A stretch of 64,000 nucleotides of DNA, taken from contig NIVC01001664.1 of assembly GCA_002269645.1 (NCBI GenBank), forward strand, positions 62,001 to 126,000, read 5' to 3'. This document shows positions 16,481 to 57,471 of the stretch, piece by piece (within the stretch, counting starts at the first letter, position 1; every line of letters starts with the position of its first letter). This DNA is from Macrostomum lignano. Its lineage: Eukaryota. A program made the position numbers and the translations under genes. The notes beneath the pieces were generated by a model. That model had not been told where the DNA came from. It worked only from the letters and a program-made list of their open reading frames with translations, and searched no databases.

Positions 16481-16756
16481 CTACTTGCCTGGGAACGGCA
16501 AGTGGCGGTAGATCCTGTAGGCAGTGCGAACCACGCGGTACACCCGCCTCCACCTGATGCGGATGCGACGGAATCTGATGCGCCACTTCTTCTGCAGCTC
16601 AGCAGCCTTCTCGTCCGTCATCTCCGGCTCGTCCATGTCAGCCAGAGCCTCCAGAGCCGCCATCGACTCCGCGTCCTCCTCCGACATCTCCTGGCTGGGT
16701 CTGGCGACGGCCAGAGCTGCGCACAGCAGGAGTCCGAGAACGAACTGCCACCTCAT
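16481..16756 (-). CDS. Secreted cationic (antimicrobial-type, arminin-like) peptide precursor, copy A, intact, 91 aa
   Basis: Signal MRWQFVLGLLLCAALAVA, acidic propiece, KK, mature WRIRFRRIRIRWRRVYRVVRTAYRIYRHLPFP, then GK*. Confidence 0.9.
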   Translation of the reverse strand: MRWQFVLGLLLCAALAVARPSQEMSEEDAESMAALEALADMDEPEMTDEKAAELQKKWRIRFRRIRIRWRRVYRVVRTAYRIYRHLPFPGK

Positions 16757-18622: not shown

Positions 18623-18649
18623 CAGTCCGAGAACGAACTGCCATCTCAT
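18623..18649 (-). pseudogene. Peptide gene stub B (MRWQFVLGL only) fused to the decamer array
   Basis: Full promoter plus the first 9 codons, then minisatellite. Confidence 0.85.
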
Positions 18650-19497
18650 GCTTGCTTGGTTGAGTTGTGTAGCCTGATGAAGCTGAGAAGCTGAGAGATA
18701 TCTCGTTTGCTGTTGGTTGAGTTCTGCTCTCTTAGGCGTCTCGCATTTATGCAGAGAAACTCGGCACGTTTTTCCGCAAGTTGTTCTTTTTCTGTTTTCG
18801 CAATGGCCTTCACGAGCGGCTGCTTTCTTTTAGACTCAGGTCAGGAACAATAAAATTGCTTTCATATCTTTGAACGCTGTTGCTATTATTATAATTGGGC
18901 ACTTCTCAAGAATAGAGTGGCATTGACCGCAGCTACTGTCACCCATTTTGGTATTGTATTTTTCTGCAAAGCTTCGCGGAATGCAAGCCGTGTTTACATA
19001 GCCAGAAATCTTGCCATGTCACATCAGATAGCAATTTGCTCTTATTGTGGCCCTGAGTTCGTCGGCACTGCAAGTTCAGATGAAATTGCACTGCATTATT
19101 GATGCTTACTGAGAAGAACTGCATGTAACTGCAATCTGATTCGATTCAATCTGCTTCGACTGGTTCTGCTCGGAAATTTCCTATCGAATTGAATTCCTTT
19201 ATGATTTGCTTATCGCTTTTGCAGTTCAGTTTCCAGTCTGAATTACGAACGGATCTCATAATCGTATTAACCTTGGTACGATATAATGCTCCTATTTTAT
19301 TGAGTTTTTTACCTGTACGAATGCAAGAGCTGAGGGCACCCTGACTCAATGCATTGTGGGAGACCACGGTCATCAGTTCCATGGAGCTGTCACACGATAA
19401 ATACAAAGCCAAAGCATTGGCTTTCCAGCCTCAACAGGGTGATATGGTACATTGTCACTTCTGCAGCAGCTACCTAAGGGCAGCTAGGAAAGCAGCA

Positions 19498-20265: not shown

Positions 20266-20292
20266 CAGTCCGAGAACGAACTGCCATCTCAT
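20266..20292 (-). pseudogene. Peptide gene stub C (MRWQFVLGL only)
   Basis: Same junction as stub B. Confidence 0.85.
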
Positions 20293-21460
20293 GCTTGCTT
20301 GGTTGAGTTGTGTAGCCTGATGAAGCTGAGAAGCTGAGAGATATCTCGTTTGCTGTTGGTTGAGTTCTGCTCTCTTAGGCGTCTCGCATTTATGCAGATA
20401 AACTCAGCACGTTTTTCCGCAAGTTGTTTTTTTCTGTTTTCTCAATGGCCTTCACGAGCGGCTGCTTTCTTTTGAGTCTTTAGGCCAAGTGCAATAAAAA
20501 ATTTTTACCGCTTTTTCAATTGTCACCGCTGGGCGCTTCTCAAGCATAGGGAGGGGGGCATTGACTACAGCTGCTGTTAGCCATCTTTCTTTGCATTGTC
20601 TTTCTCTGCACAGCCCTTCGCCCTGCCAAGGCCGCTTCGTGGAATACAAGCCGTGTTTACGTAGCCAGAAAACCTGCCACATACGATAGCAATGTGCTCC
20701 TTTTATGGCCCCGAGTTCGTTGGCACAGCAAGTTCAGATGAAATTGCATTGCAATTATACTTATACCCAGACGCAATAGCAAAATATTTTGGCCATGATT
20801 CCACACTTTTCAGGTTCTAGGCCATAGACAAAAGGATTTGACAGTAGAGGCTTCCTTGAAATAATATATATATTAATTGATATTGAACAAATGCAATGTT
20901 GAAAACGCCAAATTGCATGAAAAAATGATAATTATCTTAAGCAAAACTTTTGCAACACACTTCATCAGTTTGTATAGTCAACATTTTACAGCGAGTGTTT
21001 ACTTATCGCCCCGAAATAAAGCTGCAGTTCTCAAAGCGGCAGTTCCATCTGCTCATTGAAGCCACTCACTTCCGGCAGGTCCGGCAGTTCTTCAGTTCCA
21101 TGGTCGTTCTCAATCCAATCAATGAAATCCCGCAAGGCCTGGTCATCGTGGTGGTCCGTTGAACTGAGCTCAGACAGCAGTTGCAACTCGTCCATCTTGA
21201 CTCCGTTTAGCGAGTCCGCGGGAAGATGTTTCCAGTAATAAGCGCAGCCATAGTTGCCTTGTAGAGAGAGAGCTTGAATTTTTGAGAACCGCATAACATA
21301 ATCAAAGACTTTGAGGAAACTGTTTTGTCTATGGCCCATCTAATTATATGGTAGACCTCGTATAGCTCTCGTGTGTTTCGTCTATGGTAAACTAAATCGC
21401 AAAACAGCCAATAGCACCAGGGCCAAGAAGTGTTGAATAATGGCAGCGACAAGTGTTAAA

Positions 21461-27456: not shown

Positions 27457-27728
27457 ATGAGATGGCAGTTCGTTCTCGGACTCCTGCTGTGCGCGCTCTG
27501 GCCGCCGCCAGACCCAGCCAGGAGATGTCGGAGGAGGACGCGGAGTCGATGGCGGCTCTGGAGGATCTGGCGGGCTTGGACAAGCCGGAAATGACCGAGG
27601 AGAAGGCCGCTGAGCTGGAGAAGAAGTGGCGCATGCGTCACCGCATCCACTTCAGGTGGAGGCGGGTGTACGGCGTGGTCCACAGGGTCTACAGGGGGTA
27701 CCGGCGCATCATCTGCGGAAAGCGCTGA
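27457..27728 (+). CDS. Cationic peptide precursor copy D (90 aa after restoring one G near 27495); frameshifted as assembled
   Basis: ATG 27457. gcgcg(g)ctctg lacks one G relative to paralogs. Mature WRMRHRIHFRWRRVYGVVHRVYRGYRRIIC, then GKR*. Confidence 0.8.
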
Positions 27729-31335: not shown

Positions 31336-31810
31336 GTCTGTGCCTGTCTGTGCCTGTCTGTGCCAGTCTGTGACAGTCTGTGCCAATCTGTGCCTGCCTG
31401 TGCCTGCCTGTGCCTGTCTGTGCCTGTCTGTGCCAGTTTGTGCCAGTCTGTGCCAGTGTGTGCCTGTCTGTGCCTGTCTGTGCTAGTCTGTGCCAGTCTG
31501 TGCCAGTGTGTGCCTGTCTGTGCCTGTCTGTGCCTGTCTGTGCCAGTCTCTGCCAGTCTGTGCCAATATGTGCCTGTATGTGCCTGTCTGTGCCTGTCTG
31601 TGCCAATCTGTTCCAGAGTGAGTGAGAGTGAGTGAGTGAGTGAGTGAGTGAGTGAGTGAGTGAGTGAGTGGGTCGGTGAGTGAGTGAGTGAGTGAGTGAG
31701 TGAGTGAGTGAGTGAGTGAGTGAGTGAGTGAGTGAGTGAGTGAGTGAGTGAATGAGTGGGTGGGTGAGTGAGTGAGTGTGTGAGTGGGTGGGTGAGTGAG
31801 TGAGTGTGTG
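31336..31810. repeat. Decamer array plus (GAGT)n microsatellite
   Basis: Read directly. Confidence 0.96.
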
Positions 31811-31993: not shown

Positions 31994-34943
31994 CAAGGAC
32001 TACTTAACAACTCAGGACGCTACACTCGCGAATGGTAGAAATTCTAGAAAAGGCCGCTTGCTTTAGCTGTGTCTATGGCAATGAAGCCTTTTCACTAACA
32101 TTCTTTCATATTCTCAATGCTGGTTCAGACCAGCACTGCTGGTTTGTAGCAATAATTTGTTTCGTCTAAAATCTTGATAAATAGCAACACTCTTTTTCAT
32201 CAAAATGCCAATGAAGTGCTGCATCCCTGGATGCAGAAGCAATTATAAGAGCGGTGAAAAATGCACTGTTTTTGGCTTTCCAAAGGAATAAGCTGAAGCT
32301 GAGGCATGGCTCCATGCGTTGCCTGTGCAAATTAAGGTAATTTATGTAGCCTTTTGAACCTAATTTTTCGTTTTTACTATAAAGATACTTATATTAACTG
32401 AATTGTGATGATCATTCCATTCTATCTGTAGAAGGCTAGCATCTACATGGGAGTCTGCAAAAATCACTGGCCTGAAAATGCACCAATGAGACGAATTAAC
32501 CGCCATACACGCCCCATCGACCCACCCTCAATCTTTAAAGATTTTTCATTGACTTCCCTGCGTCAGACTGTCTCAAGTAAGTATGAATGGTTGTGTACTT
32601 AGTTTACTTACTAAGTTGTATCAGCCTGTTTCAAATATTTTAGGACGCTCTAGAGATGCTGGTCGGCGAGGCGTGCTGTTAGTCGACAGAGCTAGGGCCC
32701 CTGATGAATTGACTGCCTTCAATTCTGTCGACAGAATTGTCTCGTGGGCACTATTCATTACGTCAGCTTTGAGCCTGGATTTTGTTACCTCCGGAGGCTG
32801 GATTGTTCAATGTCAGGATTTGCGAGTCGATTTTTTGCTCATTCATGAGCGCACTGTTGAGTCTTCCGTTCGAGTTAAGAGCGACTTCACAGTCTTGGCG
32901 TATCGGCGCGATGTGCTTGTAAAAATTTCTGACATATTAGGTTTTCAGCACAGGCTGCAGCGCTACAGTCAGCTGGAAGCAATTGCCAACAGGACGCGGA
33001 GCTATGAAATCTCTGCAAGCTCTGCAGCTCAGTCACACATAGATGCGCTTCAGTCGATCTGTCTGGAATCATCTGATCCACGTCAGCAATATCTTCTACG
33101 CCAATTTCAGCTAAGCTTTAAACCACCCGGTGGCGCTCGGTACAACTGCATGGATATTTTGATGGCGGCTAAGATATATTTTGCTGGAAGACAAGCGTAC
33201 CGAGCTGCGAGAGAACTAGCGTGTCTGCCTCATCCAGCTACTCTAAAACGGCACATCGGCGGACTCGGTTCAGTTGGTACAGATAAAGATTGTCAGCTTA
33301 TTATTGAAGCTCATTTAAAGTGCTGCAGCCCGTTGCAGCGTATCTGCTCTATTGTCTTCGACGAAGTTTACGTGCAGCCTTCCTTACGTCTTCGTGGAGG
33401 CCACGTTATTGGATATGCAGAGGATGCACCACAAAATTTGGCAAGAACTATTCTAGCTATGATGGTTAAGCCATTTATGGGAGCTTCTGCTTTTGTCGCT
33501 CGACTCATTTCTATATACAGTCTACGACCAGAATTTTTGTACGAGCAAATCGTGCGGCTGTTAGAAATTTTGCATGGCCTCGGTGGAACAGCCATAGCCA
33601 TAATCTGCGACAATCATTTCACTAATCAAAGATGTTTCCGAAGATTTCAGCGGGAGAGTGACTCACAACCATGGAAGGCAGTGAATCCAGTAAACAAGAA
33701 TAAACCTTTGTTTCTACTATACGACAGTGTTCATTTGATGAAGAATATTCGCAACAACTGGTACACCCAATCGCACAGACAACTTGAGTTCCAGTCAATA
33801 TCAGACAGTGGAGTAACTAGTATAGCTAGATGGAATGATATTATTGAAATTGAGGAGCGATCGCGTGGTCACGTAGTTCGACCAACTACGCTCAGTCCGG
33901 TGTCTTGCCACCCGTCACCATTGGAACGACAGAAAGTTTCACTAGTGCTTGATGTGTTCAATGATAAAACGGTTGCTGCTCTTCGTTTGAATAGTCGTCT
34001 TGAAACAGCGGATTTCGTTGAAAGTGTACTAAAATTCTGGAAAATCGTAAACTGCAAGTCGCCATCTGCATACGTCCTACTTAATGACAAATATAGAGAG
34101 CCAATTAAGTTAAACGAGTGCGAAAATTTGACATTTCTACTCCAATTTGCTACTCTGATTAAAGGGATGTCAGGCGGCCGAGGAGCGGGACGATTGCGTT
34201 CACTGACGACAGAGACGCGAAACGCATTGTACCAAACTGTAAGAGGCCTTGTAGATTTAAGTAGCCATCTCATACAATATTACGGCTTTTCTTACGTGCT
34301 ACTTGGTGAGTTTGATAATAATTAACAACTGCTAGATGAATATGCACACCGTTGTTTTTTATGAAAATCGACAGTGCTTGTACTAAACCACTTCTGGGCA
34401 GCGTTGTGTTAACAGTTCCGTGCTTGTATTTGAGAAAATCTTCGAAATTTTTTTTGATGTTCAACTGGACCGAGATCTGCTGCGTGGAGTGTCTCGAAGA
34501 CTAGCCAACTCCATCTATAAAGGCATGGTGCGCAGAGATTCCGAGACGTCCAGACAATCAACCACCGTTTGCTCTCGCCGACTCCGCAAACTGAAGCCTA
34601 GCTGAATGTTTCTTTCAAACACCTGTATATTTTCAAACTTTGTTATAGCCATCTATGTTTTCCTTATACAGTTATGTACGGAGTTTTCCGGTTCGTTGCA
34701 TATCGTACTTTTCAATTGTCATTTACAATTCTTATGCTGGGAATATTTGCATATATTTATTGTTTGTATAACTGTAAAAATAATTATTATAGCGCAAAAC
34801 TTTTATAATTATCTATCACTTAGTACTTGCTTCTTTATCCAAAAGGCTTATTAAAAAACCATAGACACAGCTAAAGCAAGCGGCCTTTTCTAGAATTTCT
34901 ACCATTCGCGAGTGTAGCGTCCTGAGTTGTTAAGTAGTCCTTG
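31994..34943 (+). mobile_element. P-superfamily DNA transposon (THAP + transposase), 2950 bp, 85-bp perfect TIRs, 8-bp TSD GCAACCTG
   Basis: TIRs 31994-32078 / 34859-34943 start CAAGG. TSD at 31986-31993 / 34944-34951. Spliced THAP exons 32205-32336 (MPMKCCIPGC..FP..W, with in-frame TAA at 32289) and 32432-32576 (VCKNHW..PPSIF). Exon 32644-34305 has FDEVY, ICDN, DSVHLMKNIRNN and ERQKV. Confidence 0.95.
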
Positions 34944-35183: not shown

Positions 35184-35471
35184 TCAGCGCTTTCCGCAGA
35201 TGATGCGCCGGTACTTCCTGTAGGCCCTGTAGACCCTGCGAGCCACGCGGTACACCCGCCTCCACCTGATGCGGATGCGACGGAGCCTCACGCGCCACTT
35301 CTTCTCCAGCTCAGCGGCCTTCTCCTCAGTCATTTCCGGCTCGTCCAAGCCCGCCAGATCCTCCAGCGCAGCCATCGACTCCGCGTCCTCCTCCGACATC
35401 TCCTTGCTGCTGGGCCTGGCGACGGCCAGAGCCGCGCACAGCAGGAGTCCGAGAACGAACTGCCACCTCAT
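35184..35471 (-). CDS. Cationic peptide precursor copy E, intact, 95 aa
   Basis: Same prepro region. Mature WRVRLRRIRIRWRRVYRVARRVYRAYRKYRRIIC, then GKR*. Confidence 0.9.
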   Translation of the reverse strand: MRWQFVLGLLLCAALAVARPSSKEMSEEDAESMAALEDLAGLDEPEMTEEKAAELEKKWRVRLRRIRIRWRRVYRVARRVYRAYRKYRRIICGKR

Positions 35472-35760
35472 GCTTGCTTAGTTGAGTTGTGTAGCCTGAT
35501 GAAGCTGAGAAGCTGAGAGATATCTCGTTTGCTGTTGGTTGAGTTCTGCTCTCTCAGGCGTCTCGTATTTATGCAGAGAAACTCGGCACGTTTTTCCGCA
35601 CTGAGCGCATAAACAACAATGCAATGAATAACACATTACATTGTTATTGGCAACCGGATTCTGAAGCAAATACTAAATTATTTTCATCAATGGCATTTGC
35701 TTTTATTCTGTGTGTGCATAGCTCTGATTCGCTGTTGACTGCTGCTGATCTTCGGCCAGT

Positions 35761-36803: not shown

Positions 36804-37057
36804 TTGAGGTGGCAGTTCGTTCTCGGACTCCTGCTGTGCGCGGCTCTGGTCGTCGCCAGACCCAGCTAGGAGATGTCGGAGGAGGACGCGGAGTCGATGG
36901 CGGCTCTGGAGGCTCTGGCCGACATGGACGAGCCGGAGGTGACGGACGAGAAGGCCGCTGAGCTGCAGAGAAGTGGCGCCGCATCAGGTGGAAGAGGATG
37001 TACCGCGCGGTTCTAACCACCAAAAAGATCTACCGCCGCCTGCCGTTTGGAAAGTAG
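36804..37057 (+). pseudogene. Cationic peptide pseudogene copy F
   Basis: ATG->TTG, CAG->TAG at 36867, and a 1-nt deletion in the KK codons. Reconstructed mature WRRIRWKRMYRAVLTTKKIYRRLPF, then GK*. Confidence 0.9.
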
Positions 37058-40856: not shown

Positions 40857-41935
40857 ATCAGAGACCGGAGGAGACTGGATATCAGAGACAGGAGGAGACT
40901 GGATATCAGAGACAGGAGGAGACTGGATATCAGAGACAGGAGGAGACTGGATATCAGAGACAGGAGGAGACTGGATATCAGAGACAGGAGGAGACTGGAT
41001 ATCAGAGACAGGAGGAGACTGGATATCAGAGACAGGAGGAGACTGGATATCAGAGACAGGAGGAGACTGGATATCAGAGACAGGAGGAGACTGGATATCA
41101 GAGACAAGAGATTGGATATCAGAGGCAGGAGGAGACTGGATATCAGTGACAGGAGACTGGATATCAGTGACCGGAGACTGGATATCAGTGACCGGAGACT
41201 GGATATCAGAGACAGGAGACTGGACATCAGAAACAGTAGACTGGATATCAGAGACAGGAGACTGGATATCAGAGGCAGGAGACTGGATATCAGTGGCAGG
41301 AGACTGGATATCAGAGGCAGGAGACTGGATATCAGAGGCAGGAGACTGGATATCAGAGGCAGGAGACTGGATATCAGTGACAGGAGACTGGATATCAGAG
41401 ACAGGAGACTGGATATCAGAGGCAGGAGACTGGATATCAGTGGAAGGAGACTGGATATCAGTGACAGGAGACTGGATATCAGAGACAGGAGACTGGATAT
41501 CAGTGACAGGAGACTGGATATCAGAGACAGGAGACTGGATATCAGAGGCAGGAGACTGGATATCAGTGGCAGGAGACTGGATATCAGAGACAGGAGACTG
41601 GATATCAGAGACAGGAGACTGGATATCAGTGACAGGAGACTGGATATCAGAGACAGGAGACTGGATATCAGAGACAGGAGACTGGAAATCAGAGGCAGGA
41701 GACTGGATATCAGAGACAGGAGACTGGATATCAGAGACAGGAGACTGGATATCAGAGGCAGGAGACTGGATATCAGTGACAGGAGACTGGATCTCAGAGG
41801 CAGAAGACTGGATATCAGTGACAGGAGACTGAATATCAGTGACAGGAGACTGGATATCAGTGGCAGGAGACTGGATATCAGAGACAGGAGACTGGATATC
41901 AGTGGCAGGAGACTGGATATCAGTGACAGGAGACT
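40857..41935. repeat. Minisatellite with 24-bp units (about 10 copies) switching to 21-bp units (gagacaggagactggatatca)
   Basis: Read directly. One more unit lies at 43112-43133, after the LINE. Confidence 0.96.
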
Positions 41936-43111
41936 GTCCCGCATAGCGACCTGTGCCTCAACTTTCTCAACGAGTGTCAGGCCAATCGCGTCTTCACCGA
42001 TGGCATTGCCTCAACGCTCAACCTGAGACAGCGCTACTCCGTAGCTATCGATTCGCGCGATAACATCAATGACCAATGGAACCTTGGTGAGCTTCATTGC
42101 TACACCGACGGTTCTAAGCAGTCAGCCAACACCGGCTTTGGTGTTGGAATCTTTCTGAACGGGAGGGTCATCGCTTCCCACGCTCAATACACTGGGGTCA
42201 ACTCCAGTGTTTTCCAAAATGAAGTTCTGGCCATCAGCTCCTGCACTGCAGAGCTTCTCGCCACTGGCGTTATTGGCAAGAACATCATTTTCCATTCGGA
42301 CAGCCAAGCTGCCTTGCACGCCATCAGTGGCTGCAGCACCAACTCTGCTACAGTCCTCGACTGTATCAAACTTCTCAACGTGTTGGGTTCCGCCAACAAA
42401 ATTACCCTTAAGTGGGTTCCGGGGCATGTGGGGATCCGAGGAAATGAGCTGGCTGACACCCTTGCAAAAGTTGGTGCCTCCGGCTCCTCTCTCGGCCCCG
42501 AACCTCTTGTCCCGATTCCTGGCTGTGTCATCGACTCGCGCATCAAAGCGTGGATCAGGACTCAGCACCGCTCGACTTGGGCGAACCGCACGAACTGCAG
42601 GCAATCCAGAGGCGCTGTCCCTCTGCCCTCTCACCAGCTCCGGAAGCTCCTCTTGCGCCTCTCGCGCAGAGACATCCGGGCTGCCACCATGACCCTCTCT
42701 GGTCACGGCTGCTTCTCCAGGCACCAGTACCTGCAGGGCAACGCCACCAACGCCACCTGTAGTTTCTGCAACTCAGGTGACGAAACCGCTGAGCATTTCG
42801 TCAGCATCTGTCCCGCCTTCACGCGGGCCAGACTCACTTACCTCGGGCCACACACATCTATTACTGAAGCGTGCAAACCCGAAAACTTTAATCAGCTCAT
42901 GCGCTACCTTCGGGCCACCCGCAGGGCTGAACTCTCCTTTCCAGAGAGCACCATAGCTGCTGGCGACACTGAGGGACCTCCCTGGGCGGCGCCAACCCTC
43001 CGTCCATAGCGACGCGTCGGACGTTCAGGGATTAGCGGAATGGGCGCCCGCGCCTTCCCGCTGTGTCCCCTCCGGGACAGCCCTGCAGCTAAGTCAAGTA
43101 AGTCAAGTAAG
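41936..43111 (+). mobile_element. 5'-truncated R1/LOA-like LINE (RNase H + C-terminal zinc finger) inserted in the minisatellite
   Basis: Open frame from 41936: YTDGS, NEVLAI, SDSQAAL, WVPGHVGIRGNELAD, CSFC..ETAEHFV..CP. Tail ctaagtcaagtaagtcaagtaag matches the copy at 22.6-26.4 kb. Confidence 0.92.
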
Positions 43112-43543
43112 GCAGGAGACTGGATATCAGTGAGGCAAGATCGGGCACATCGCACGCGCATGCAGAAAAGTGCATGCACACTGTTTACTCGTATAGTATC
43201 GAAGGCTAAATAATTTGATGCCAGTTCACGTATCTACTCATTATCTGCATGTAACCACTTTGGTGAATATTTCAAGCAAAAGAAGACAGGAGTATCAAGT
43301 GTGATGAGTGAATCCATTTTTCCGTATTATATTTATTCAAAAAATTAAATTAAAACATAATGGAAGAAGTACGTATCATTGGAGGGCGAAAAGGATATTT
43401 TGGGTCGCCGCGAAACCTACCATGGAACTCTCTTGCTTGGCATGAAAATACGCTACACGAGCGTCAGCAAATCAAGGCGACTGAGTGATGGGCGGAGTCC
43501 GATCCGTGTCCGAAGTCGGTCGGTGCAGCGGAGCACTGGTGGC

Positions 43544-43810
43544 CTACTTGCCAAGCGGCATGTGGCGGTAGATCCTGTAGACGAGACGAAGCACCTTCCT
43601 CCACCTGATGCGGACGCGGCGACGCCTCCCGAGCCACTTCTTCTGCAGCTCAGCGGTCTTCTCGTCTGTCACTTCCGGCTCGTCCATGTCGGCCAGAGCC
43701 TCCAGAGCCGCCATCGACTCCGCGTCCTCCTCCGACATCTCCTTGCTGCTGGGTCTGGCGACGGCCAGAGCTGCGCACAGCAGGAGTCCGAGAACGAACT
43801 GCCACCTCAT
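43544..43810 (-). CDS. Cationic peptide precursor copy G, intact, 88 aa
   Basis: Same prepro region. Mature WLGRRRRVRIRWRKVLRLVYRIYRHMPL, then GK*. Confidence 0.9.
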   Translation of the reverse strand: MRWQFVLGLLLCAALAVARPSSKEMSEEDAESMAALEALADMDEPEVTDEKTAELQKKWLGRRRRVRIRWRKVLRLVYRIYRHMPLGK

Positions 43811-44066
43811 GCTTTCTTGGTTGAGTTGTGTAGCCTGATGAAGCTGAGAAGCTGAGAGATATCTCGTTTGCTGTTGGTTGAGTTCTGCTCTCTCAGGCGT
43901 CTCGATTTATGCAGATAAACTCGGCACGTTTTTCCGCACTGAGCGCATAAACGATGCAATGAATAACACATTACGTGTTATTGGCAACCGGATTCTGAAG
44001 CAAAAATACAACTATTTCCATCAATGGCATTTGTTTCTATTTTCTGCTGTTTACTGCCTGTTTACT

Positions 44067-47913: not shown

Positions 47914-50900
47914 ACGAGGCCAACTCCTCCTCTGGAGGAGAAAGGGGAAGAACTCCCATCACCGGAATTCCATTCCCTGAACTCCATCAGCTGAATCCCA
48001 AGACCCGAATCCCATCATCCAACTTTTCTCCAAATCTAAAGTTTCTCCAGAAACTGGACTCAATCGAAATTTTCTCCGTGAAACTAAAATCCTCTCCGTG
48101 AAATTGAACACAATCGAAATCCTCTCCACGAAACAGAAATCCTCTCCGTATAAATGAATGGTCCGACCGGGCGTAGCTTGGTTGGGTGTTAAACCAGTGG
48201 GGCGTGGCTCTTGTGCGTTGGTGCGGGGGGTGGTGGGCCGGGCCTTGGTCACGTGCCCGCGGCTGGGTGGCGTTTATTTAATACGGTGCGGGCTGTCGCT
48301 GACCCGCCAAGCGCGTATTAATTTTTCTCCGTATATTTTTTCTCCGTATTCTCCGTATAATTCTCTCCGTATAAATGAAAACATCGGAATCGTCTCCGTT
48401 TAAACTGGACTCAATCGAATTTTCTCCGTCCAACAACTCAACTCTCCAGATTCATTGGTTAGGGTTAGGGTTAGAACTACGCTCAGCTGCAAGTTAAAAG
48501 GCACCGATAAAAATATTGAATTGAATTGAATCAATTGATTGTGCAACCGATTTCACAGTCAGTCAGTATCAGTTGAAGTTGAAGTTAACAAAAAGATTGC
48601 GCAATCTAAATCAACCCTCCAATACACAGCGATAGTAAGAATTTGAACCCTCACCCTACTTTGTCTATTATGTTCCGCAAAACTAAGTACAATCTTTGCA
48701 GGACCTTAAAAGTATGGAAACCATTTTCTTAATTCTAAGCTTTCTGTTTCCATATTTAAAGCAAACAACTTACATCCCTGAACTAAGCATTAAAAGATCT
48801 TTCCAGCAATATAAGTCTCTCCTCTCAAAGTTTAAAACTCGAGGTACAGTTAGCGTTTGAAATTTACTGATTTCCCGACTGCTTGCTAGAGAAGCTCGCA
48901 AGAATTTCACTGCCAAGCTAATACACAGGGCGCCAATAATAAAACCAATTGAATCTGGACATGTCCTATCAATCTGTTGACACTGTACAACTGCTATGTA
49001 CACTCAGCCCAAGCCCTACCCCCCGTTCTGGGGGAATCATTAAATTTAATTGAACCCCCCAACACGCGGGGGGGGGGTATTTGCATTGAACGCAGAACAC
49101 GCGCACCCACCCCCCAAAACACAGCGACCCGCGGGCGGAGGTTGGGGTGGCTATTTTTACAAACAGACTGCAACGAATCCACTGAAGAGGCAGAGTGGCC
49201 ACAGAAGGGCCAAAGAAGGTTAAGAAATCAGTTTTCTGCTTTTTTAGGGATCTCAAAATGAAAAAATTAAAGATTAAAATAGCTATAAACCCAGTCCGGA
49301 AAATTTGCAGTTTTCCCATATAAGTTTCAACGCTGACTTGCCAGTAGTCTAGGAGAAAAGTTGCAACATACGGACAAACAAACAAACATCGCATCACTTT
49401 TAGTATAAGGACGAGGCCAACTCCTCCTCTGGAGGAGAAAGGGGAAGAACTCCCATCACCGGAATTCCATTCCCTGAAATCCATCAGCTCAAATTCCATG
49501 ACTTGAATCCCATCTTCCAAATCATCTCCAAATCCTCTGTAAAGCCATAAAACCATATCTTGTTTTCCCTGTTCGCAAAAACTGACTGCCATTGTCCAGA
49601 CTCAGATTCTTCTGTCTCCTCTCTTCTCTTTTCTCTCCTCTCACGTCTCTCATCTCTACTACCTTATTTATCTCTTCTCCCTCGTCTTTCGTCTTTCTCT
49701 CCTGTCTCCTTTATCCCCTGTTTTCTCCTCTCTCCTCTCTTCTCTCCTCTCTCATCTCTCATCCCTCATGCCTCATCTCACTATTTCTTTCTCCTCTACT
49801 CTCAGCTCCTCTCTTCTCTCTCCTCTCATCTCTCCTGTCTCCCTCTGCTATCTCATATCTTCCCTCTCATCTCCTCTCTCCTCTTCTCTTCTCTCTCCTT
49901 CGTTCCCGCTTACTCCCCTCTTCTCTCCCATCTGTCATGTCTAATCTCTCGTCTCATTTCTACTCTGTTTTCTATCATCTCATCTCATCTCTCTTCTCTT
50001 TTCATTCTTCTCTTTACTCTCTTCTCTGACTGATTGAAGATGCCAAATCCATCCTCCTCTCCGCGAAGCAGAAAAATCCTGTCCATGCAACTGAAAACCA
50101 TCGAAATCCTCTCCGTGAAACTGGACTCCTTCGAAATCATTTCCTTGAAACTTAAATCCATCAAAATGGTCTCCATAAAACAGAAATCAATCATAAATTA
50201 TCTCCGCGAAACAGAAATCCTCTCCGTGAAGCTGAACATCATCGAAATCCTCTCCGTGAAACTGAACATCATCGAAATCCTTTCCACGAAACTGAACACG
50301 ATCGAAATCCTCTCCACAAAACTGAACACCATCGAAATCCTCTCCACGAAACTGAACACCATCGAAATCCTCTCCACGAAACTGAACACCATCGAAATCC
50401 TCTCCACGAAACAGAAATCCTCTTCGTCAAAATTAAAACATTGAAATCGTCTCCGCTAAACTGGACTCAATCGAATTTTTTCCATCAAACAACTCAACTC
50501 TCCGGATTCATTGGTTAGGGTTAGGGTTAGGGTTAGGGTTAGAACTACGCACAGGTTTGTGTTAAAAGGCACTGATAAAAAAATATTGAACTAATTGAAT
50601 CAATTCATTGCGCAACTGATTTCACAGTCAGTCAGTCAATCTAAATCAACCCTCCAATACACAGCAGCAGTGAGAAGTTGAACCCTCCCCCCAACTTTAT
50701 CTATTACGTCTCGCAAAACTGATTACAATTTTGCAAAAAGTTAAAAGTATGGGAATAGTTTTCCCAATGAAAAGCTTTTAGTTTTCATATATAAAGCAAA
50801 CAACTTATATCCTCGAACTCTGCGTTGCAAGATCTTTCCAGCAATATAAGTGTCTCCTCTCAAAGTTTAAAACTCGAGGAACAGTTAGCGTTTGAAATTT

Positions 50901-53571
50901 ACCGATTTCCCGACTGCTTGCTAGAGAAGCTCGCAAGTTTATTCATTGAATTTCACTGCCAAGCTAATACACACGGCTGCCTATGGAGAAAAAAGGCGCC
51001 AATAATAAAACCAATTGAATCTCGACACAGTCCTGACTCCTATCTATCTGTTTACACTGTACAACTGCTATGTACACTCAGCCCAAGACCAACCCCCCGT
51101 TCTGGGGGGAATCATTAAATTCAACCCAACCCCCCAACACGCGGGGGGGTTTTATTTGCATTGAACGCAGAACACGCGCACCCACCACCACTCAATACAC
51201 AGCGGCCCGCGGGCGGAGGTTGGGGTGGCTATTTTTACAAACAGACTGCAACCCCTCCACTGGAGAGGCAGAGTGACCACAGAAGGGCCAAAGAAGGTTA
51301 AGAAATTAGTTTTCTGCTTTTTTAGGGATCTTAAAATGTAAAAATGAAAGATTAAAATTGCTATAAACCCAATCCGGAAAATTTGCAGTTTACCCATATA
51401 AGTTTCAACGCTGACTTGTCAGTAGTCTAGGAGAAAAATTGCAACACACATACAGACAAACAAACAACGCACCAGTTTTAGTATTAAGAGACGAGGCCAA
51501 CTCCTCCTCTGGAGGAGAAAGGGGAAGAACTCCCATCACCGGAATTCCATTCCCTGAAATCCATCAGCTCAAATTCCATGACTTGAATCCCATCTTCCAA
51601 ATCATCTCCAAATCCTCTGTAAAGCCATAAAACCATATCTTGTTTTCCCTGTTCGCAAAAACTGACTGCCATTGTCCAGACTCAGATTCTTCTGTCTCCT
51701 CTCTTCTCTTTTCTCTCCTCTCACGTCTCTCATCTCTACTACCTTATTTATCTCTTCTCCCTCGTCTTTCGTCTTTCTCTCCTGTCTCCTTTATCCCCTG
51801 TTTTCTCCTCTCTCCTCTCTTCTCTCCTCTCTCATCTCTCATCCCTCATGCCTCATCTCACTATTTCTTTCTCCTCTACTCTCAGCTCCTCTCTTCTCTC
51901 TCCTCTCATCTCTCCTGTCTCCCTCTGCTATCTCATATCTTCCCTCTCATCTCCTCTCTCCTCTTCTCTTCTCTCTCCTTCGTTCCCGCTTACTCCCCTC
52001 TTCTCTCCCATCTGTCATGTCTAATCTCTCGTCTCATTTCTACTCTGTTTTCTATCATCTCATCTCATCTCTCTTCTCTTTTCATTCTTCTCTTTACTCT
52101 CTTCTCTGACTGATTGAAGATGCCAAATCCATCCTCCTCTCCGCGAAGCAGAAAAATCCTGTCCATGCAACTGAAAACCATCGAAATCCTCTCCGTGAAA
52201 CTGGACTCCTTCGAAATCATTTCCTTGAAACTTAAATCCATCAAAATGGTCTCCATAAAACAGAAATCAATCATAAATTATCTCCGCGAAACAGAAATCC
52301 TCTCCGTGAAGCTGAACATCATCGAAATCCTCTCCGTGAAACTGAACATCATCGAAATCCTTTCCACGAAACTGAACACGATCGAAATCCTCTCCACAAA
52401 ACTGAACACCATCGAAATCCTCTCCACGAAACTGAACACCATCGAAATCCTCTCCACGAAACTGAACACCATCGAAATCCTCTCCACGAAACAGAAATCC
52501 TCTTCGTCAAAATTAAAACATTGAAATCGTCTCCGCTAAACTGGACTCAATCGAATTTTTTCCATCAAACAACTCAACTCTCCGGATTCATTGGTTAGGG
52601 TTAGGGTTAGGGTTAGGGTTAGAACTACGCACAGGTTTGTGTTAAAAGGCACTGATAAAAAAATATTGAACTAATTGAATCAATTCATTGCGCAACTGAT
52701 TTCACAGTCAGTCAGTCAATCTAAATCAACCCTCCAATACACAGCAGCAGTGAGAAGTTGAACCCTCCCCCCAACTTTATCTATTACGTCTCGCAAAACT
52801 GATTACAATTTTGCAAAAAGTTAAAAGTATGGGAATAGTTTTCCCAATGAAAAGCTTTTAGTTTTCATATATAAAGCAAACAACTTATATCCTCGAACTC
52901 TGCGTTGCAAGATCTTTCCAGCAATATAAGTGTCTCCTCTCAAAGTTTAAAACTCGAGGAACAGTTAGCGTTTGAAATTTACCGATTTCCCGACTGCTTG
53001 CTAGAGAAGCTCGCAAGTTTATTCATTGAATTTCACTGCCAAGCTAATACACACGGCTGCCTATGGAGAAAAAAGGCGCCAATAATAAAACCAATTGAAT
53101 CTCGACACAGTCCTGACTCCTATCTATCTGTTTACACTGTACAACTGCTATGTACACTCAGCCCAAGACCAACCCCCCCGTTCTGGGGGAATCATTAAAT
53201 TCAACCCAACCCCCCAACACGCGGGGGGGTTTTATTTGCATTGAACGCAGAACACGCGCACCCACCACCACTCAATACACAGCGGCCCGCGGGCGGAGGT
53301 TGGGGTGGCTATTTTTACAAACAGACTGCAACCCCTCCACTGGAGAGGCAGAGTGACCACAGAAGGGCCAAAGAAGGTTAAGAAATTAGTTTTCTGCTTT
53401 TTTAGGGATCTTAAAATGTAAAAATGAAAGATTAAAATTGCTATAAACCCAATCCGGAAAATTTGCAGTTTACCCATATAAGTTTCAACGCTGACTTGTC
53501 AGTAGTCTAGGAGAAAAATTGCAACACACATACAGACAAACAAACAACGCACCACTTTTAGTATTAAGACG
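47914..53571. repeat. Three tandem copies of a ~2.08-kb unit (one diverged 1.5-kb copy plus two near-identical copies), each with a (TTAGGG)n tract; the two long copies also have CT-rich and 30-bp repeats
   Basis: acgaggccaactcc at 47914, 49411 and 51491. Duplicated ORFs are offset by 2080. Confidence 0.93.
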
Positions 53572-55927
53572 AAGGAGGAAACCGTTGTGTCAGGACGTAG
53601 CACACTCCTATGGAAACTTACGGTACAACCATGCAACGGTAACACCATTGTCTTTGATTCAATGTTTATAAGCATTTCACGTGAATTTTGCTACTTAATT
53701 AATTTTTGAATGCTTTACAATACACACTATAGGGCCTACACTGAAAACAAGTTTGTAATTTCAATTATCCATTCCTATATGATAAACATGTTATTCTTCG
53801 TACTAAAAATATTGTAAACTCAGCATAAAAACTTGTTGCATTTCTTAAAATAACTTTTAGCTTTCTATTTTCTGCTGTTTCAAGCGTAAAGCCTCAGCTG
53901 AAAAATAAAACCTATGAAAAATATTAGTTCCTAAAAAATTCTTAGAATGCTACGTAAAGCATAATTTAATTTAAACTCCTATTATTCCAAGAAAACAGCA
54001 ATGCAAACAATTTATAAATGAATCGAATCGATGCTATCCGAATCCAAATAAAACTAATGATGTAATATATTAAATAATATACTAACAGTCTCTAGTCTCG
54101 TATAAGACGATGTGCGTTTAAAAACCTAATTAACTAAGTAAATATAAAGTTGCACACGATTTTTACTATATTTTGTAAGGGATGACTTGGTTGCTCGTGG
54201 CTTGTGGTACTGGTAGGTAGGTCTATTCTATAGGTCTATATAAGCCTATGGTATGGGCTATGGCCTACCAGGAAGTCTGATCTGAGGGGCACTTCCCACC
54301 TGGCTGGATCTAGGGGTAAGGAACAGTTGCACTGCCTAGGACATAGCCGATAAACATTAAAAGAAATGGTGCCTTTGACTGGTGACTTTCAGTCAAATTT
54401 TATTGGTCTTCCTCCAGGCTCCATGACCTGGATGGCCCCTTATGTTATGGGCATGGCTTACTGAATGCCAATAAGGGTCTATCTCCCTCTTAGACAGTCT
54501 AGCTAACAAATGAAATTGAATTATTAAAATGCAATAATAGAAATTGAATTCATTTAATTTTGTCAATGGCTATATATAATATAATGTCGGCCTAGTTGTA
54601 GACTTGTAGCATCAAATCCTATTTTAATAGCTAGGTCTATAACTATATAGAGATCTCAGATCTAGTAGGCTTAGCCATCTCACTTATTTTTGATATTTTT
54701 TATTTAATCAATTTATATGCTTAGTCCCCTTATGTATTGTTTAACTTTTATAGTTTTATCCTATACTTTAATTGATAAAAATAAATCTAATATAGCTAAG
54801 GAAAGTAGCAAAAACTTTGCAATAATACCTAGTGGAATAAGCAACCCTTACTATCCCATTATATCTAGGCCTATAGACCACCCTGTATCTAAGTTGCAAT
54901 ATGCCTAATACCTAAAAATTTAGTCTTAGGTTTAAAATGCATAAAAGGACTATAAAAGAACATTTTACCATTTTTGCTATAACTAATGCCTAATCAAGCT
55001 ACTTGTTTTTCTTATAATAGACTGTGATAGGACCTATTCTGGACTAAAGCCAAGGTAGCAAATGTTTAATTTATTTGTATTTTTTACATGGATTAATGCA
55101 CATCATTGTCTTAACTCTTGACTCTCATACAAAGGCAATAGAGCAAGAAGCAATAGCTTTGAAACATGGTGCACAGATGGCGCACAAATGGCACATAGAT
55201 AGCACACAGATTGTCCCAAAAAATTATTCTGGTACACACTATGCCACTTTCTTGACTTTGGACCTAGGCCCCTATTAAAAAGAAAAACAATCAAAAATGA
55301 AAAAGCCATTTCTCTGAAAACAATAATAGTTTATTATCATCCAGTGAAAATCCTTATTGTCTCTAACTATCCCAGGTCCAATTTTTATAACATTTTTTAC
55401 CAAACCCAGCTTCCTAGTATCACTGTGAGCAGAATGACCTATCATTTGAATACATAAGTTATTCAGGCTCCACTTTATGAGCTTCAGTTGATAGGCCCTT
55501 ACTTTGCTTGCTATCTTTCAATTCATGATTTTTAGGTATAATATACTATATATCTTGATTTTGATATATCATGTAATAATATATACCCATGCTAAAATTT
55601 TATATTCAAAATTGTTATTCAGACTCTTTGATTAGGCTCTTAGTTGAGTTTCTTGTATGTTCTATGACCTTGCTATATCCTTTAGTAGATGCTATGTATG
55701 CTTCTTAATGTATAGTTCATTTGTAATTTTACTTATAATCTTTAGATTTTTATAATTGTAACTGTCAGTATGCTCATAGCAATTGACCTGATCCTTTTTA
55801 TACACCAAATTCTTTTCAGGGATATATATGCTCAGATTTAACTTCAAGCATTAACAATTCATTAACTACAAAAGCTTTATTAGATACTCCAATAAGCTTA
55901 GCTATAAATTACTTAGAAAGAGGCAGG

Positions 55928-56089: not shown

Positions 56090-57445
56090 AAAAATCTCAT
56101 GATGGGGATATCTGGCCAATCTCAAATGAGGATAACAAGTCAGGATGGGGATATCTGGCCAATCTCAAATGAGGATAACAAGTCAGGATGGGGATATCTG
56201 GCCAATCTCAAATGAGGATAAAGATCCCAGCAAGTCAGGATGGGGATATCTGGCCAATCTCAAATGAGGATAAAGATCCCAGCAAGTCAGGATGGGGATA
56301 TCTGGCCAATCTCAAATGAGGATAAAGATCCCAGCAAGTCAGGATGGGGATATCTGGCCAATCTCAAATGAGGATAACAAGTCAGGATGGGGATATCTGG
56401 CCAATCTCAAATGAGGATAAAGATCCCAGCAAGTCAGGATGGGGATATCTGGCCAATCTCAAATGAGGATAAAGATCCCAGCAAGTCAGGATGGGGATAT
56501 CTGGCCAATCTCAAATGAGGATAAAGATCCCAGCAAGTCAGGATGGGGATATCTGGCCAATCTCAAATGAGGATAACAAGTCAGGATGGGGATATCTGGC
56601 CAATCTCAAATGAGGATAAAGATCCCAGCAAGTCAGGATGGGGATATCTGGCCAATCTCAAATGAGGATAAAGATCCCAGCAAGTCAGGATGGGGATATC
56701 TGGCCAATCTCAAATGAGGATAAAGATCCCAGCAAGTCAGGATGGGGATATCTGGCCAATCTCAAATGAGGATAACAAGTCAGGATGGGGATATCTGGCC
56801 AATCTCAAATGAGGATAAAGATCCCAGCAAGTCAGGATGGGGATATCTGGCCAATCTCAAATGAGGATAAAGATCCCAGCAAGTCAGGATGGGGATATCT
56901 GGCCAATCTCAAATGAGGATAAAGATCCCAGCAAGTCAGGATGGGGATATCTGGCCAATCTCAAATGAGGATAAAGATCCCAGCAAGTCAGGATGGGGAT
57001 ATCTGGCCAATCTCAAATGAGGATAAAGATCCCAGCAAGTCAGGATGGGGATATCTGGCCAATCTCAAATGAGGATAACAAGTCAGGATGGGGATATCTG
57101 GCCAATCTCAAATGAGGATAAAGATCCCAGAAAGTCAGGATGGGGATATCTGGCCAATCTTAAATGAGGATAAAGATCCCAGCAAGTCAGGATGGGGATA
57201 TCTGGCCAATCTCAAATGAGGATAAAGATCCCAGCAAGTCATGATGGGGATATCTGGCCAATCTCAAATGAGGATAACAAGTCAGGATGGGGATATCTGG
57301 CCAATCTCAAATGAGGATAAAGATCCCAGCAAGTCAGGATGGGGATATCTGGCCAATCTCAAATGAGGATAGCAAGTCAGGATGGGTATATCTGGCCAAT
57401 CTCAAATGAGGATAGCAAGTCAGGATGGGGATATCTGGCCAATCT
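56090..57445. repeat. 43/52-bp minisatellite with 199-bp higher-order structure in USE1 intron 1
   Basis: Short units at 56343, 56542, 56741, 57044 and 57243. Confidence 0.95.
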
Positions 57446-57471
57446 CTCACCCTCACCCATGCTCTGCTCAG

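What the first reader, a model, noticed from the sequence alone, without database searches (positions are those of the whole stretch)
43544..43640. Mature peptides share an R-[IV]-R-W-R-[RK]-V core with Hydra arminins
Seen: RVRIRWRKV in G, RIRIRWRRV in A and E, and FRWRRV in D, after a K-K-W start and before a GK(R) end. From memory, Hydra arminin 1a-C is KPWRFRRAIRRVRWRKVAPYIPFVVKTVGKK, also preceded by a signal peptide and an acidic region. Arminins are regarded as Hydra-restricted. Inference: this is either striking convergence or evidence of a wider family.
Basis: partly seen in the sequence, partly recalled or inferred. Interest (0 to 1): 0.75.

Follow-up and report, generated by a model that had tools for sequence, protein, structure and literature searches.

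The report
Flatworm cationic peptide genes resembling arminins
A cluster of small flatworm (Macrostomum lignano) genes encodes secreted, arginine/tryptophan-rich peptides that look like antimicrobial peptides and resemble Hydra arminins, but the resemblance is best explained by convergence rather than shared ancestry.

Summary
The minus-strand ORF at 43544-43810 encodes an 88-aa precursor: signal peptide, acidic propiece, then KKWLGRRRRVRIRWRKVLRLVYRIYRHMPLGK. Copies A and E carry RIRIRWRRV and copy D carries FRWRRV.

The window is Macrostomum lignano DNA. It holds 3 intact copies, 2 disabled copies and 2 truncated copies of an unnamed gene family. The family has a conserved promoter, signal peptide and acidic region, a hypervariable cationic C-terminus and an uninterrupted coding sequence.

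Homology to arminins is not supported:
- A family HMM searched against 1.84 billion proteins found only Macrostomum relatives.
- The best cross-family score is 21.9 bits, about E=14 at that scale.
- Signal and acidic regions show no specific similarity (p 0.14-0.96).
- The shared 17-residue stretch gives p 0.005-0.37 under dipeptide-preserving shuffles.
- The motif is missing from most Macrostomum subfamilies.
- The arminin VPYIPxVV tail is absent.
- Hydra arminin genes have three coding exons.

Most likely this is a lineage-specific family of amidated host-defence peptides that converged on an Arg/Trp motif. The antimicrobial function is inferred, not shown. A residual chance of true homology is about 10%.

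The parts
43544..43810 (-). Gene copy G (the finding). Intact, uninterrupted CDS of 88 aa: signal 43757-43810, acidic propiece 43643-43756, cationic peptide 43547-43642, stop 43544-43546.
43905..43935 (-). Promoter module of G: GGAAAAACGTGCC, then 11 nt, then the TATA-like GCATAAAT at -102 from the ATG. It is identical or nearly so in six copies in the window, and is also found upstream of divergent family members elsewhere in the genome.
43332..43337 (-). AATAAA polyadenylation-type signal about 210 nt after the stop codon of G.
16481..16756 (-). Gene copy A, intact, 91 aa. Cationic part KKWRIRFRRIRIRWRRVYRVVRTAYRIYRHLPFPGK. It corresponds to the 3' part of GenBank model BOX15_Mlig001477g4. 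Promoter module at 16852-16882.
35184..35471 (-). Gene copy E, intact, 95 aa. Cationic part KKWRVRLRRIRIRWRRVYRVARRVYRAYRKYRRIICGKR. Promoter module at 35567-35597.
27457..27728 (+). Gene copy D. A 1-nt deletion after codon 13 breaks the signal peptide, which is either a pseudogene or an assembly indel. The rest reads ...KKWRMRHRIHFRWRRVYGVVHRVYRGYRRIICGKR. Promoter module at 27331-27361.
36804..37057 (+). Gene copy F, a pseudogene. ATG is changed to TTG, there is an in-frame TAG at 36867-36869, a 1-nt deletion before the cationic part, and an 18-nt deletion within it.
18623..18778 (-). Truncated copy B. Promoter, 5'UTR and the first 9 codons (MRWQFVLGL) remain. It then runs into a 10-bp minisatellite array (17605-18620).
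20266..20421 (-). Truncated copy C. Same structure as B, abutting the 10-bp minisatellite array at 19498-20263.

Best explanation
**What it is.** The window carries a tandem, partly decayed cluster of a Macrostomum-specific multigene family of small prepropeptides.

**How it probably works.** Each gene has its own TATA-type promoter and an uninterrupted coding sequence.
- An 18-aa signal peptide sends the product into the secretory pathway.
- A 37-38-aa acidic propiece (net charge -10 to -11) neutralises the cationic part during transport.
- A conserved Lys-Lys site marks the start of a 32-39-aa Arg/Trp-rich peptide (net charge +14 to +20).
- The C-terminal Gly-Lys(-Arg) is the classical signal for carboxypeptidase trimming and amidation.
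- The released peptide most likely acts as a membrane-active host-defence (antimicrobial) peptide.

**Relation to arminins.** The resemblance to Hydra arminin 1a is convergent. Both share the generic signal/anionic/cationic/amidated precursor plan and a short Arg-Trp-Arg motif that such peptides favour. It is not evidence that arminins exist outside Hydra.

**Shown:** gene anatomy, family membership, conservation pattern, and the lack of significant arminin homology.
**Inferred:** signal cleavage, processing sites, amidation, and antimicrobial function.
For: **Organism and family.**
- Only M. lignano hypothetical proteins match the precursor.
- An HMM of the copies against 1.84 billion representative proteins finds 10 hits. 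All named ones are M. lignano. One comes from an unnamed SRA run and one is a likely spurious repeat protein.
- All family members share M[RK]WQ[FL][AV]LGLLLCAALAVA and an acidic region. Their cationic C-termini differ completely (for example KKFVRVRARIRLG, KKWRIKSACKIF..., LKWFSRWFRITY...), and most end in Gly.

**Real genes.**
- The promoter module and 5'UTR are conserved.
- The CDS is uninterrupted here and at five other loci.
- Polyadenylation signals are present.
- The GenBank BOX15 models derive from an RNA-seq-guided transcriptome assembly (PMC5730564).

**Conservation pattern typical of host-defence families.**
- dN in the cationic part is about 3-9 times that of the prepro part.
- dN/dS is 0.43-1.51 in the cationic part against 0.16-0.38 in the prepro part for pairs among the intact copies and for E-D; the G-D pair is an exception (prepro 0.98, cationic 0.71).

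**Physical properties.**
- Charges are as stated above.
- The first 17 residues have strong period-2 amphipathicity and the remainder has helical amphipathicity.
- AlphaFold2 predicts one long helix over residues 49-83 with pLDDT 71-86.

**Independent prediction.** Copy A (BOX15_Mlig001477g4) is listed as an ungrouped flatworm AMP-like peptide, positive in 81.8% of 11 prediction tools, in S5 of PMC10414684.

**Against homology with arminins.**
- BLASTP gives E=0.04 (G) and E=6 (A) for a single comparison.
- The best HMM cross-score is 21.9 bits. Its analytic p of 7e-9 corresponds to E of about 14 in the library searched. The empirical p under segment shuffles is 5e-5 to 5e-2.
- Signal segment p is about 0.5 and acidic segment p is 0.14-0.96.
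- Dipeptide-preserving shuffles of the cationic part give p=0.005-0.37, and there is no signal against arminins 2b and 3a.
- The arminin HMM scores Macrostomum subfamilies that share the prepro region but lack the motif at only 3-8 bits.
- Arminins have an invariant VP[YF]IPxVV tail that is absent here.
- The Hydra arminin gene has three coding exons split by two introns.
Against: **Function untested.** No experiment or expression-site data was found for this family, so antimicrobial function rests on sequence properties and one in-silico screen.

**Mature ends uncertain.** The cationic part contains many internal RR/KR/RxxR sites. The published pipeline predicted a shorter product, VVRTAYRIYRHLPFPGK.

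**Residual arminin signal.**
- hhalign gives 54.5% and 89% probability between the family profiles.
- The observed score exceeds all 300 column-permuted controls (36.9 against a mean of 18.5, sd 4.6).
- Precursor length and segment lengths are nearly identical in the two families.
A weak true relationship therefore cannot be excluded.

**Selection not shown.** dS is also higher in the cationic part, so the conserved 5' half may partly reflect gene conversion rather than selection.
Confidence: 0.65

Rival explanations
1. True homology. The Macrostomum family and Hydra arminins descend from one ancestral gene, either by ancient eumetazoan origin with massive loss or by horizontal transfer. Arminins would then not be Hydra orphans.
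For: - A colinear alignment over 71 residues at 32% identity.
- Identical total length (88 aa) and near-identical segment lengths.
- An ungapped 17-residue match at the start of the cationic part, plus a shared G-K end.
- hhalign probability 54.5-89%, with the score above all 300 permuted controls.
- The R[IV]RW[RK] and KPW elements are among the conserved columns of the arminin cationic part.
- Both families show a conserved prepro region with a variable mature part, and both are arranged in clusters.
Against: - No arminin at E<=0.001 in the exhaustive HMM search.
- The prepro region, the best-conserved part of each family, carries no specific similarity.
- The motif is restricted to some Macrostomum subfamilies.
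- The arminin VPYIPxVV tail is missing.
- Three coding exons in Hydra against none split in six Macrostomum loci.
- Dipeptide-preserving nulls remove most of the signal.
- The p-values are uncorrected for the selection of arminin from all known antimicrobial peptides.
- Arminins are reported absent from all non-Hydra cnidarians (PMC10945409).
Confidence: 0.1
2. Same gene family, different job. The peptides are not antimicrobial but act as signalling peptides (neuropeptide- or hormone-like), or as secreted effectors of another kind such as seminal-fluid, adhesive-gland or deterrent/toxin peptides.
For: - A dibasic cleavage site plus a C-terminal Gly amidation signal is also the hallmark of neuropeptide precursors.
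- Short family members would yield 8-10-residue amides, for example IFRVHVRF-amide from P0015, which ends like a flatworm RFamide.
- No expression or activity data exist.
Against: - Neuropeptide families conserve the mature peptide and vary the spacer. Here the prepro part is conserved and the mature part is hypervariable, with indels.
- Peptides of 32-39 residues, 30-41% Arg and charge +14 to +20 are atypical for signalling peptides and typical for membrane-active peptides.
- AMP predictors score copy A positive.
Confidence: 0.2

Closest known systems
Hydra arminins (arminin 1a, 1c, 2a/b, 3a/b, 375, 524, 4364)
   Same: - About 85-90-aa precursor with an 18-aa signal, an acidic region of about 38 aa and a cationic region of about 31 aa.
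- The cationic part starts K-x-W, contains R-[IV]-R-W-R-K-[VIL] and ends G-K(-K).
- A C-terminal amidation signal.
- A multigene family with clustered paralogues.
- The first half of the cationic part is predicted helical (PMC10945409, PMC12013895).
   Different: - No specific similarity in the signal or acidic regions.
- The arminin tail VP[YF]IPxVV is absent. Macrostomum instead continues with an amphipathic RxxRxxxR stretch.
- The start of the cationic part differs: DA|KP in Hydra against a dibasic KK in Macrostomum.
- Three coding exons against an uninterrupted CDS.
- No database-scale significance.
Trichoplax 'arminin-like' putative AMPs (PMC12013895)
   Same: They were called arminin-like purely on architecture: signal peptide, acidic N-terminal region, basic C-terminal region and a C-terminal Gly for amidation. 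This shows that the plan recurs in unrelated lineages.
   Different: They are 150-250 aa long, and no shared Arg/Trp motif is reported.
Conserved-prepro / hypervariable-mature host-defence families such as frog preprodermaseptins and cathelicidins (own knowledge, not tested here)
   Same: A conserved signal and pro region with a rapidly diversifying cationic mature peptide. Expansion by gene duplication. Frequent C-terminal amidation through Gly-Lys/Arg.
   Different: No sequence relationship. Cathelicidins have a folded cathelin pro-domain rather than a short acidic spacer.
Arg/Trp-rich antimicrobial peptides such as indolicidin, tritrpticin and lactoferricin-derived RRWQWR (own knowledge, not tested here)
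   Same: Short R-W-R type motifs and a very high Arg content. Arg/Trp pairing is a recurrent solution for binding membrane interfaces, which makes independent origin of RWR motifs plausible.
   Different: Different precursors, lengths and taxa. No match was found in the PDB sequence search.

Membership tests
Hydra arminin family | Precursor plan: signal peptide, negatively charged N-terminal region, positively charged C-terminal region. | tested here: met
   Segments are 18/38/32 aa with charges -10 and +14 in G, against 18/39/31 aa with -13 and +12 in arminin 1a.
Hydra arminin family | Highly conserved N-terminal (signal plus acidic) sequence, SYEDVKEEIKNE.E.EI.EDLEEESD (PMC4820302; alignment A2). 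| tested here: not met
   Segment shuffles give signal p of about 0.5 and acidic p of 0.14-0.96. The arminin HMM scores Macrostomum members that lack the cationic motif at only 3-8 bits.
Hydra arminin family | Cationic part begins KPW and contains R[IV]RW[RK]. | tested here: inconclusive
   KKW...R[IV]RWR[RK]V is present in A, E and G. However p is only 0.005-0.37 under the dipeptide-preserving null, and the motif is absent from most Macrostomum subfamilies.
Hydra arminin family | Conserved hydrophobic proline tail VP[YF]IPxVV before GKK (P76 invariant and P79 in at least 90% of the 10 arminins). | tested here: not met
   Alignment A2 against the Macrostomum alignments. Macrostomum has an RVYRVxRxxYRIYR stretch instead.
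Hydra arminin family | C-terminal Gly followed by basic residues (amidation signal). | tested here: met
   GK in G and A, GKR in E and D, GKK in arminins. This feature is generic to many amidated peptides.
Hydra arminin family | Gene structure: three coding exons (signal | acidic | cationic). | tested here: not met
   The Hydra locus L001 has exons at 10001-10060, 10276-10371 and 10458-10565. The Macrostomum CDS is uninterrupted in the window and in loci L002-L009.
Hydra arminin family | Statistically significant sequence or profile similarity at database scale. | tested here: not met
   No arminin at E<=0.001 among 1.84 billion proteins. The best cross-score is 21.9 bits. Pairwise BLASTP gives E=0.04. 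hhalign at 54-89% probability is inflated by the shared architecture.
Hydra arminin family | Bactericidal activity of the C-terminal peptide and expression in endodermal epithelium. | not testable with these tools
   No expression or activity data for the Macrostomum genes were found.
Linear cationic amidated host-defence peptide precursors (generic class) | Secretory signal, anionic propiece, processing site, strongly cationic amphipathic mature peptide, and an amidation signal. | tested here: met
   The signal peptide is judged from the sequence pattern and the predicted helix only; no dedicated predictor was available.
Linear cationic amidated host-defence peptide precursors (generic class) | Conserved prepro region with a hypervariable mature region, and expansion by duplication. 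| tested here: met
Linear cationic amidated host-defence peptide precursors (generic class) | Demonstrated antimicrobial activity. | not testable with these tools
   Only an in-silico prediction exists, for a fragment of copy A: 81.8% of 11 tools (PMC10414684 S5).

The most novel reading that the evidence does not exclude
Arminins are not a Hydra orphan family. The Macrostomum genes would be genuine, highly diverged relatives. This could arise from an ancient eumetazoan host-defence gene lost almost everywhere, or from horizontal transfer of a processed (intronless) arminin transcript into a macrostomorph lineage. Some macrostomorphs (Microstomum) prey on Hydra; this is from my own knowledge and was not tested.
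Probability: 0.08. Interest if true: 0.8.

Novelty: new member of a known kind. Interest (0 to 1): 0.4.

Why it matters
Flatworm antimicrobial peptides are essentially undescribed. A 2023 survey found that flatworms lack the classical lophotrochozoan AMP groups, and it discarded species-specific candidates (PMC10414684).

This window shows a coherent, expressed, expanding gene family in M. lignano, which is a transgenic model flatworm. The family has all the sequence hallmarks of host-defence peptides and a shared promoter module. That gives a concrete set of candidates for studying flatworm immunity and host-microbe control.

It is also a caution. A striking motif match plus an identical precursor plan with arminins does not survive architecture-aware statistics. 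This is relevant to the growing habit of calling peptides 'arminin-like' on architecture alone.

Tried and rejected
- **Augustin 2009.** The original arminin paper (PMC2786370) is not held, so family features were taken from reviews and from my own alignment.
- **Short query.** I used a doubled peptide only to retrieve the precursors, and its E-values are not used as evidence.
- **Pfam.** No family matched either the Macrostomum or the arminin precursors.
- **PDB sequences.** The search with the copy A cationic peptide found nothing at E<=10.
- **Literature searches.** Two searches for 12 BOX15/Mlig gene identifiers found nothing. 'Macrostomum' plus 'antimicrobial peptide' gave no relevant paper.
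- **Invalid output.** The last block (options --nonull2 --nobias) printed stale output and is disregarded.
- **Placozoan controls.** The arminin-like placozoan sequences, wanted as same-architecture controls, are not held as text.
- **HMMER analytic p-value.** I rejected the analytic p (7e-9) as a measure of relatedness. Segment-shuffled arminins reach similar scores four to five orders of magnitude more often.
- **P0016.** This 603-aa repeat protein (E=4.4e-4) was judged a compositional false positive.
- **Protamine-like nuclear proteins.** Rejected because of the signal peptide and acidic propiece.

Full report
**1. What is at the coordinates**

The minus strand of 43544-43810 is an uninterrupted ORF of 88 codons. 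It divides into three parts:
- MRWQFVLGLLLCAALAVA, a hydrophobic signal-type segment (43757-43810).
- RPSSKEMSEEDAESMAALEALADMDEPEVTDEKTAELQ, 38 aa with net charge -10 (43643-43756).
- KKWLGRRRRVRIRWRKVLRLVYRIYRHMPLGK, 32 aa with net charge +14 (43547-43642).

The finding's range therefore covers the cationic part plus the stop codon. A tblastn of the precursor against the window finds seven related places:

| Copy | Coordinates | State |
|---|---|---|
| A | 16481-16756 (-) | intact, 91 aa |
| E | 35184-35471 (-) | intact, 95 aa |
| G | 43544-43810 (-) | intact, 88 aa |
| D | 27457-27728 (+) | 1-nt deletion in the signal peptide |
| F | 36804-37057 (+) | start codon lost, in-frame stop, frameshift, 18-nt deletion |
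| B | 18623-18649 (-) | only the first nine codons |
| C | 20266-20292 (-) | only the first nine codons |

R[IV]RWR[RK]V occurs nowhere else in the six-frame translation.

**2. The recalled arminin sequence**

KPWRFRRAIRRVRWRKVAPYIPFVVKTVGKK is printed verbatim as arminin 1a-C in PMC6217004. It is the C-terminus of the 88-aa precursor ARM1A_HYDVU, which was retrieved here together with arminin 1c and a third H. vulgaris paralogue. [quoted passage not shown] The observation and the recollection are both correct.

**3. Organism and family**

The only database relatives of the precursor are 'hypothetical proteins' of the free-living flatworm Macrostomum lignano.

An HMM of six close copies was run exhaustively against 1.84 billion representative proteins. 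It returned ten hits at E<=0.001:
- Eight are M. lignano proteins from different contigs.
- One comes from an SRA run assembly of unknown organism.
- One is a long repeat protein that I regard as a compositional false positive.

No Hydra protein was returned.

The wider family shares a nearly invariant signal peptide, M[RK]WQ[FL][AV]LGLLLCAALAVA, and a recognisable acidic region (..EE.AEAM.ALEAL..). Its cationic C-termini are unalignable: KKFLRVRLPRVRMPRV..., EKWRRRRRFRWRKAIRVAGKV..., KKWRIKSACKIFRRLL..., KKFVRVRARIRLG, KKKIFRVRVHIG and LKWFSRWFRITYRRRGG.... Most end in Gly or Gly plus basic residues. The RWR[RK]V core is confined to the subfamily in this window and one other (P0010, P0017 and P0018).

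**4. Gene anatomy**

- The seven copies share a unit of about 500 bp.
- About 125 bp upstream of the ATG is almost invariant. It contains GGAAAAACGTGCC, then 11 nt, then the TATA-like GCATAAAT at -102/-103.
- The same module, GGAAA[AC]ACGTG followed by a TATA box, lies upstream of divergent family members at other loci (P0002, P0009, P0012, P0017). This points to common regulation.
- The CDS is uninterrupted in every locus examined. M. lignano genes average 4.9 introns (PMC5730564).
- AATAAA or ATTAAA follows 130-210 nt after the stop in G, E and D; no such hexamer was found within 400 nt after the stop of A.
- The GenBank BOX15 models are derived from an RNA-seq-guided transcriptome assembly, so these genes are transcribed.
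- Among A, D, E and G, dN in the cationic part is about 3-9 times that in the prepro part. dN/dS is 0.43-1.51 against 0.16-0.38 for all pairs except G-D, where the prepro part reaches 0.98 and the cationic part 0.71. dS is also higher in the cationic part, so gene conversion of the 5' half may contribute.

**5. Likely mechanism**

*Shown:* the three-part composition, the conserved KK before the cationic part, the terminal Gly-Lys(-Arg), charge compensation between propiece and peptide, amphipathicity, and an AlphaFold2 model with one long helix over residues 49-83 at pLDDT 71-86. The amphipathicity has period 2 in the first 17 residues and is helical in the RVYRVxRxxYRIYR stretch.

*Inferred from established knowledge of peptide processing:*
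- Signal peptidase cleavage after AVA.
- Convertase cleavage at KK.
- Carboxypeptidase trimming.
- Amidation of the residue before Gly by peptidylglycine alpha-amidating monooxygenase.
- Release of a membrane-active Arg/Trp-rich peptide.

An independent in-silico screen listed copy A (BOX15_Mlig001477g4) as an 'ungrouped' flatworm AMP-like peptide, positive in 81.8% of 11 predictors. It predicted a shorter product, VVRTAYRIYRHLPFPGK (PMC10414684 S5). The true mature ends are therefore open. I put the host-defence reading at roughly 0.6-0.65. The main functional rival is a signalling or other secretory role. The short family members would give 8-10-residue amides, one of them ending in RF-amide.

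**6. Is it related to arminins?**

Evidence for a relationship:
- A colinear BLASTP alignment over 71 residues at 32% identity.
- Equal total length and near-equal segment lengths.
- An ungapped 17-residue match, KxWxxRxxxRxRWR[KR]V.
- Conservation of KPW and R[IV]RW[RK] among ten arminins from two Hydra species.
- hhalign probabilities of 54.5% (close copies) and 89% (wide family) against the arminin alignment.
- Column-permutation controls that keep architecture and composition give a mean score of 18.5 (sd 4.6, maximum 34.5) against the observed 36.9, with 0 of 300 reaching it.

Evidence against a relationship:
- **(i) Pairwise and profile scores.** The pairwise BLASTP E-values are 0.04 (G) and 6 (A) for a single comparison. 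The best HMM cross-score is 21.9 bits, which scales to E of about 14 in the library searched and explains why no arminin was returned. Segment-shuffled arminins reach that score with p between 5e-5 and 5e-2. The analytic p-value is therefore inflated by four to five orders of magnitude by the shared architecture.
- **(ii) Location of the similarity.** It lies only in the cationic part. The signal and acidic segments, which are the best-conserved parts of both families, give p of about 0.5 and 0.14-0.96. The arminin HMM scores Macrostomum subfamilies that share the prepro region but lack the motif at only 3-8 bits.
- **(iii) Dipeptide-preserving shuffles.** These keep the Arg-hydrophobic alternation. 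Under them the cationic match drops to p=0.005 at best (G against 1a) and 0.05-0.37 for the other copies. There is no signal against arminins 2b and 3a. None of these values is corrected for arminin having been chosen from the whole remembered AMP literature.
- **(iv) Distribution of the motif.** It is not ancestral-looking in Macrostomum, because most subfamilies lack it.
- **(v) The arminin tail.** The conserved VP[YF]IPxVV tail (P76 invariant and P79 present in at least 90% of the 10 arminins) has no counterpart here.
- **(vi) Exon structure.** The Hydra gene has three coding exons (signal | acidic | cationic). By my reading of the splice junctions both introns are phase 1. All Macrostomum genes are unsplit.
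- **(vii) The start of the cationic part.** It differs: DA|KP in Hydra against a dibasic KK in Macrostomum. The shared 'K.W' may therefore serve different purposes; this is inference.
- **(viii) Recurrence of the plan.** The same precursor plan has already been called 'arminin-like' in Trichoplax without sequence similarity (PMC12013895).

From general knowledge, R-W-R motifs are a recurrent solution in Arg/Trp-rich antimicrobial peptides. I conclude that convergence is the best reading and leave about 10% for true homology.

**7. Comparison and novelty**

The family works like arminins and like other host-defence families with a conserved prepro region and a hypervariable mature peptide. It fails the membership tests for the arminin family that could be run: N-terminal sequence, tail motif, exon structure and database-scale significance.

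It is an unnamed, uncharacterised family. I found no paper that describes it, apart from one supplementary-table entry for a mis-joined model of copy A. I therefore class it as a new member of a known kind. Interest is moderate. It gives a concrete, testable candidate AMP family in a transgenic flatworm model where AMPs are essentially unknown. The more exciting claim, arminins outside Hydra, is not supported.

**8. Limits**

- No signal-peptide predictor, AMP database or eukaryotic transcriptome collection was available.
- Coverage of other flatworms and cnidarians in the 1.84-billion-protein library is unknown.
- The AlphaFold2 model of arminin 1a is of low confidence (mean pLDDT 55), so the structural comparison is only indicative.

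Noticed in passing
window 16852-16882, 18745-18775, 20388-20418, 27331-27361, 35567-35597, 43905-43935; L002 about 9871-9901; L004 about 393-427; L007, L008 and L009 upstream of 6001: A conserved promoter module, GGAAA[AC]ACGTG(C/G)C followed by 11-14 nt and then [CT]ATAAAT, precedes family members from very different subfamilies. P0012 has a full CACGTG E-box. This suggests one transcription factor controls the whole family. Its identity is unknown.
   Followed up: partly
window 17605-18620, 19498-20263, 28646-29047, 31336-31604: Arrays of a 10-bp minisatellite (GTCTGTGCCT). Two of them directly replace the gene body of copies B and C after codon 9. They produce the long spurious Cys-rich ORFs seen in the ORF list. 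Copies B and C lie in a tandem duplication of about 1.9 kb (16.9-18.8 kb and 18.8-20.4 kb).
   Followed up: partly
P0001 (BOX15_Mlig001477g4, 139 aa) and P0008 (UniRef A0A1I8JEL3, 634 aa 'Sushi domain-containing protein'): Both public gene models are chimeric. P0001 joins the first 31 residues of one copy, through a translated 5'UTR, to the whole of copy A. P0008 fuses a family member onto the end of an unrelated Sushi/ephrin-type protein.
   Followed up: partly
P0012, P0013, P0015 (M. lignano paralogues on other contigs): Short family members would yield 8-10-residue amidated peptides: FVRVRARIRL-amide, IFRVRVHI-amide and IFRVHVRF-amide. The last ends in RF-amide like flatworm FMRFamide-like peptides. 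This raises the question of whether part of the family has a signalling role.
   Followed up: no
window 23453-26274 (+) and 42122-43009: A non-LTR retrotransposon with an endonuclease-like ORF, a reverse transcriptase and RNase H (Pfam RVT_1, RNase_H). A second 3' fragment (RNase H part) lies directly downstream of gene G.
   Followed up: partly
window 32583-34325 (+): A 580-aa ORF with a TNP-like RNase H N-terminal domain (P-element/THAP9-type transposase relative) lies between copies D and E.
   Followed up: partly
window 1089-1847, 3568-6149, 8786-13417 (-), 57382-58858: Flanking host genes: a DUF938 protein, replication factor C subunit 3 (exons separated by introns full of minisatellites), a multi-cadherin-repeat protein, and the SNARE Use1.
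   Followed up: partly
window 49560-51640 and 51640-53720; also 40869-41936, 56097-57446, 60713-61934: A near-perfect tandem duplication of about 2.08 kb, plus several large minisatellite arrays (periods 21, 52 and 52/477). The window is unusually rich in tandem repeats, which generate many long artefactual ORFs.
   Followed up: no
L001 10001-10568 (Hydra vulgaris CP147942.1): The Hydra arminin paralogue LOC136080542 has three coding exons. The first is the signal peptide, the second the acidic region, and the third the linker plus cationic peptide. Both introns appear to be phase 1, so the three functional modules are separate exons.
   Followed up: partly
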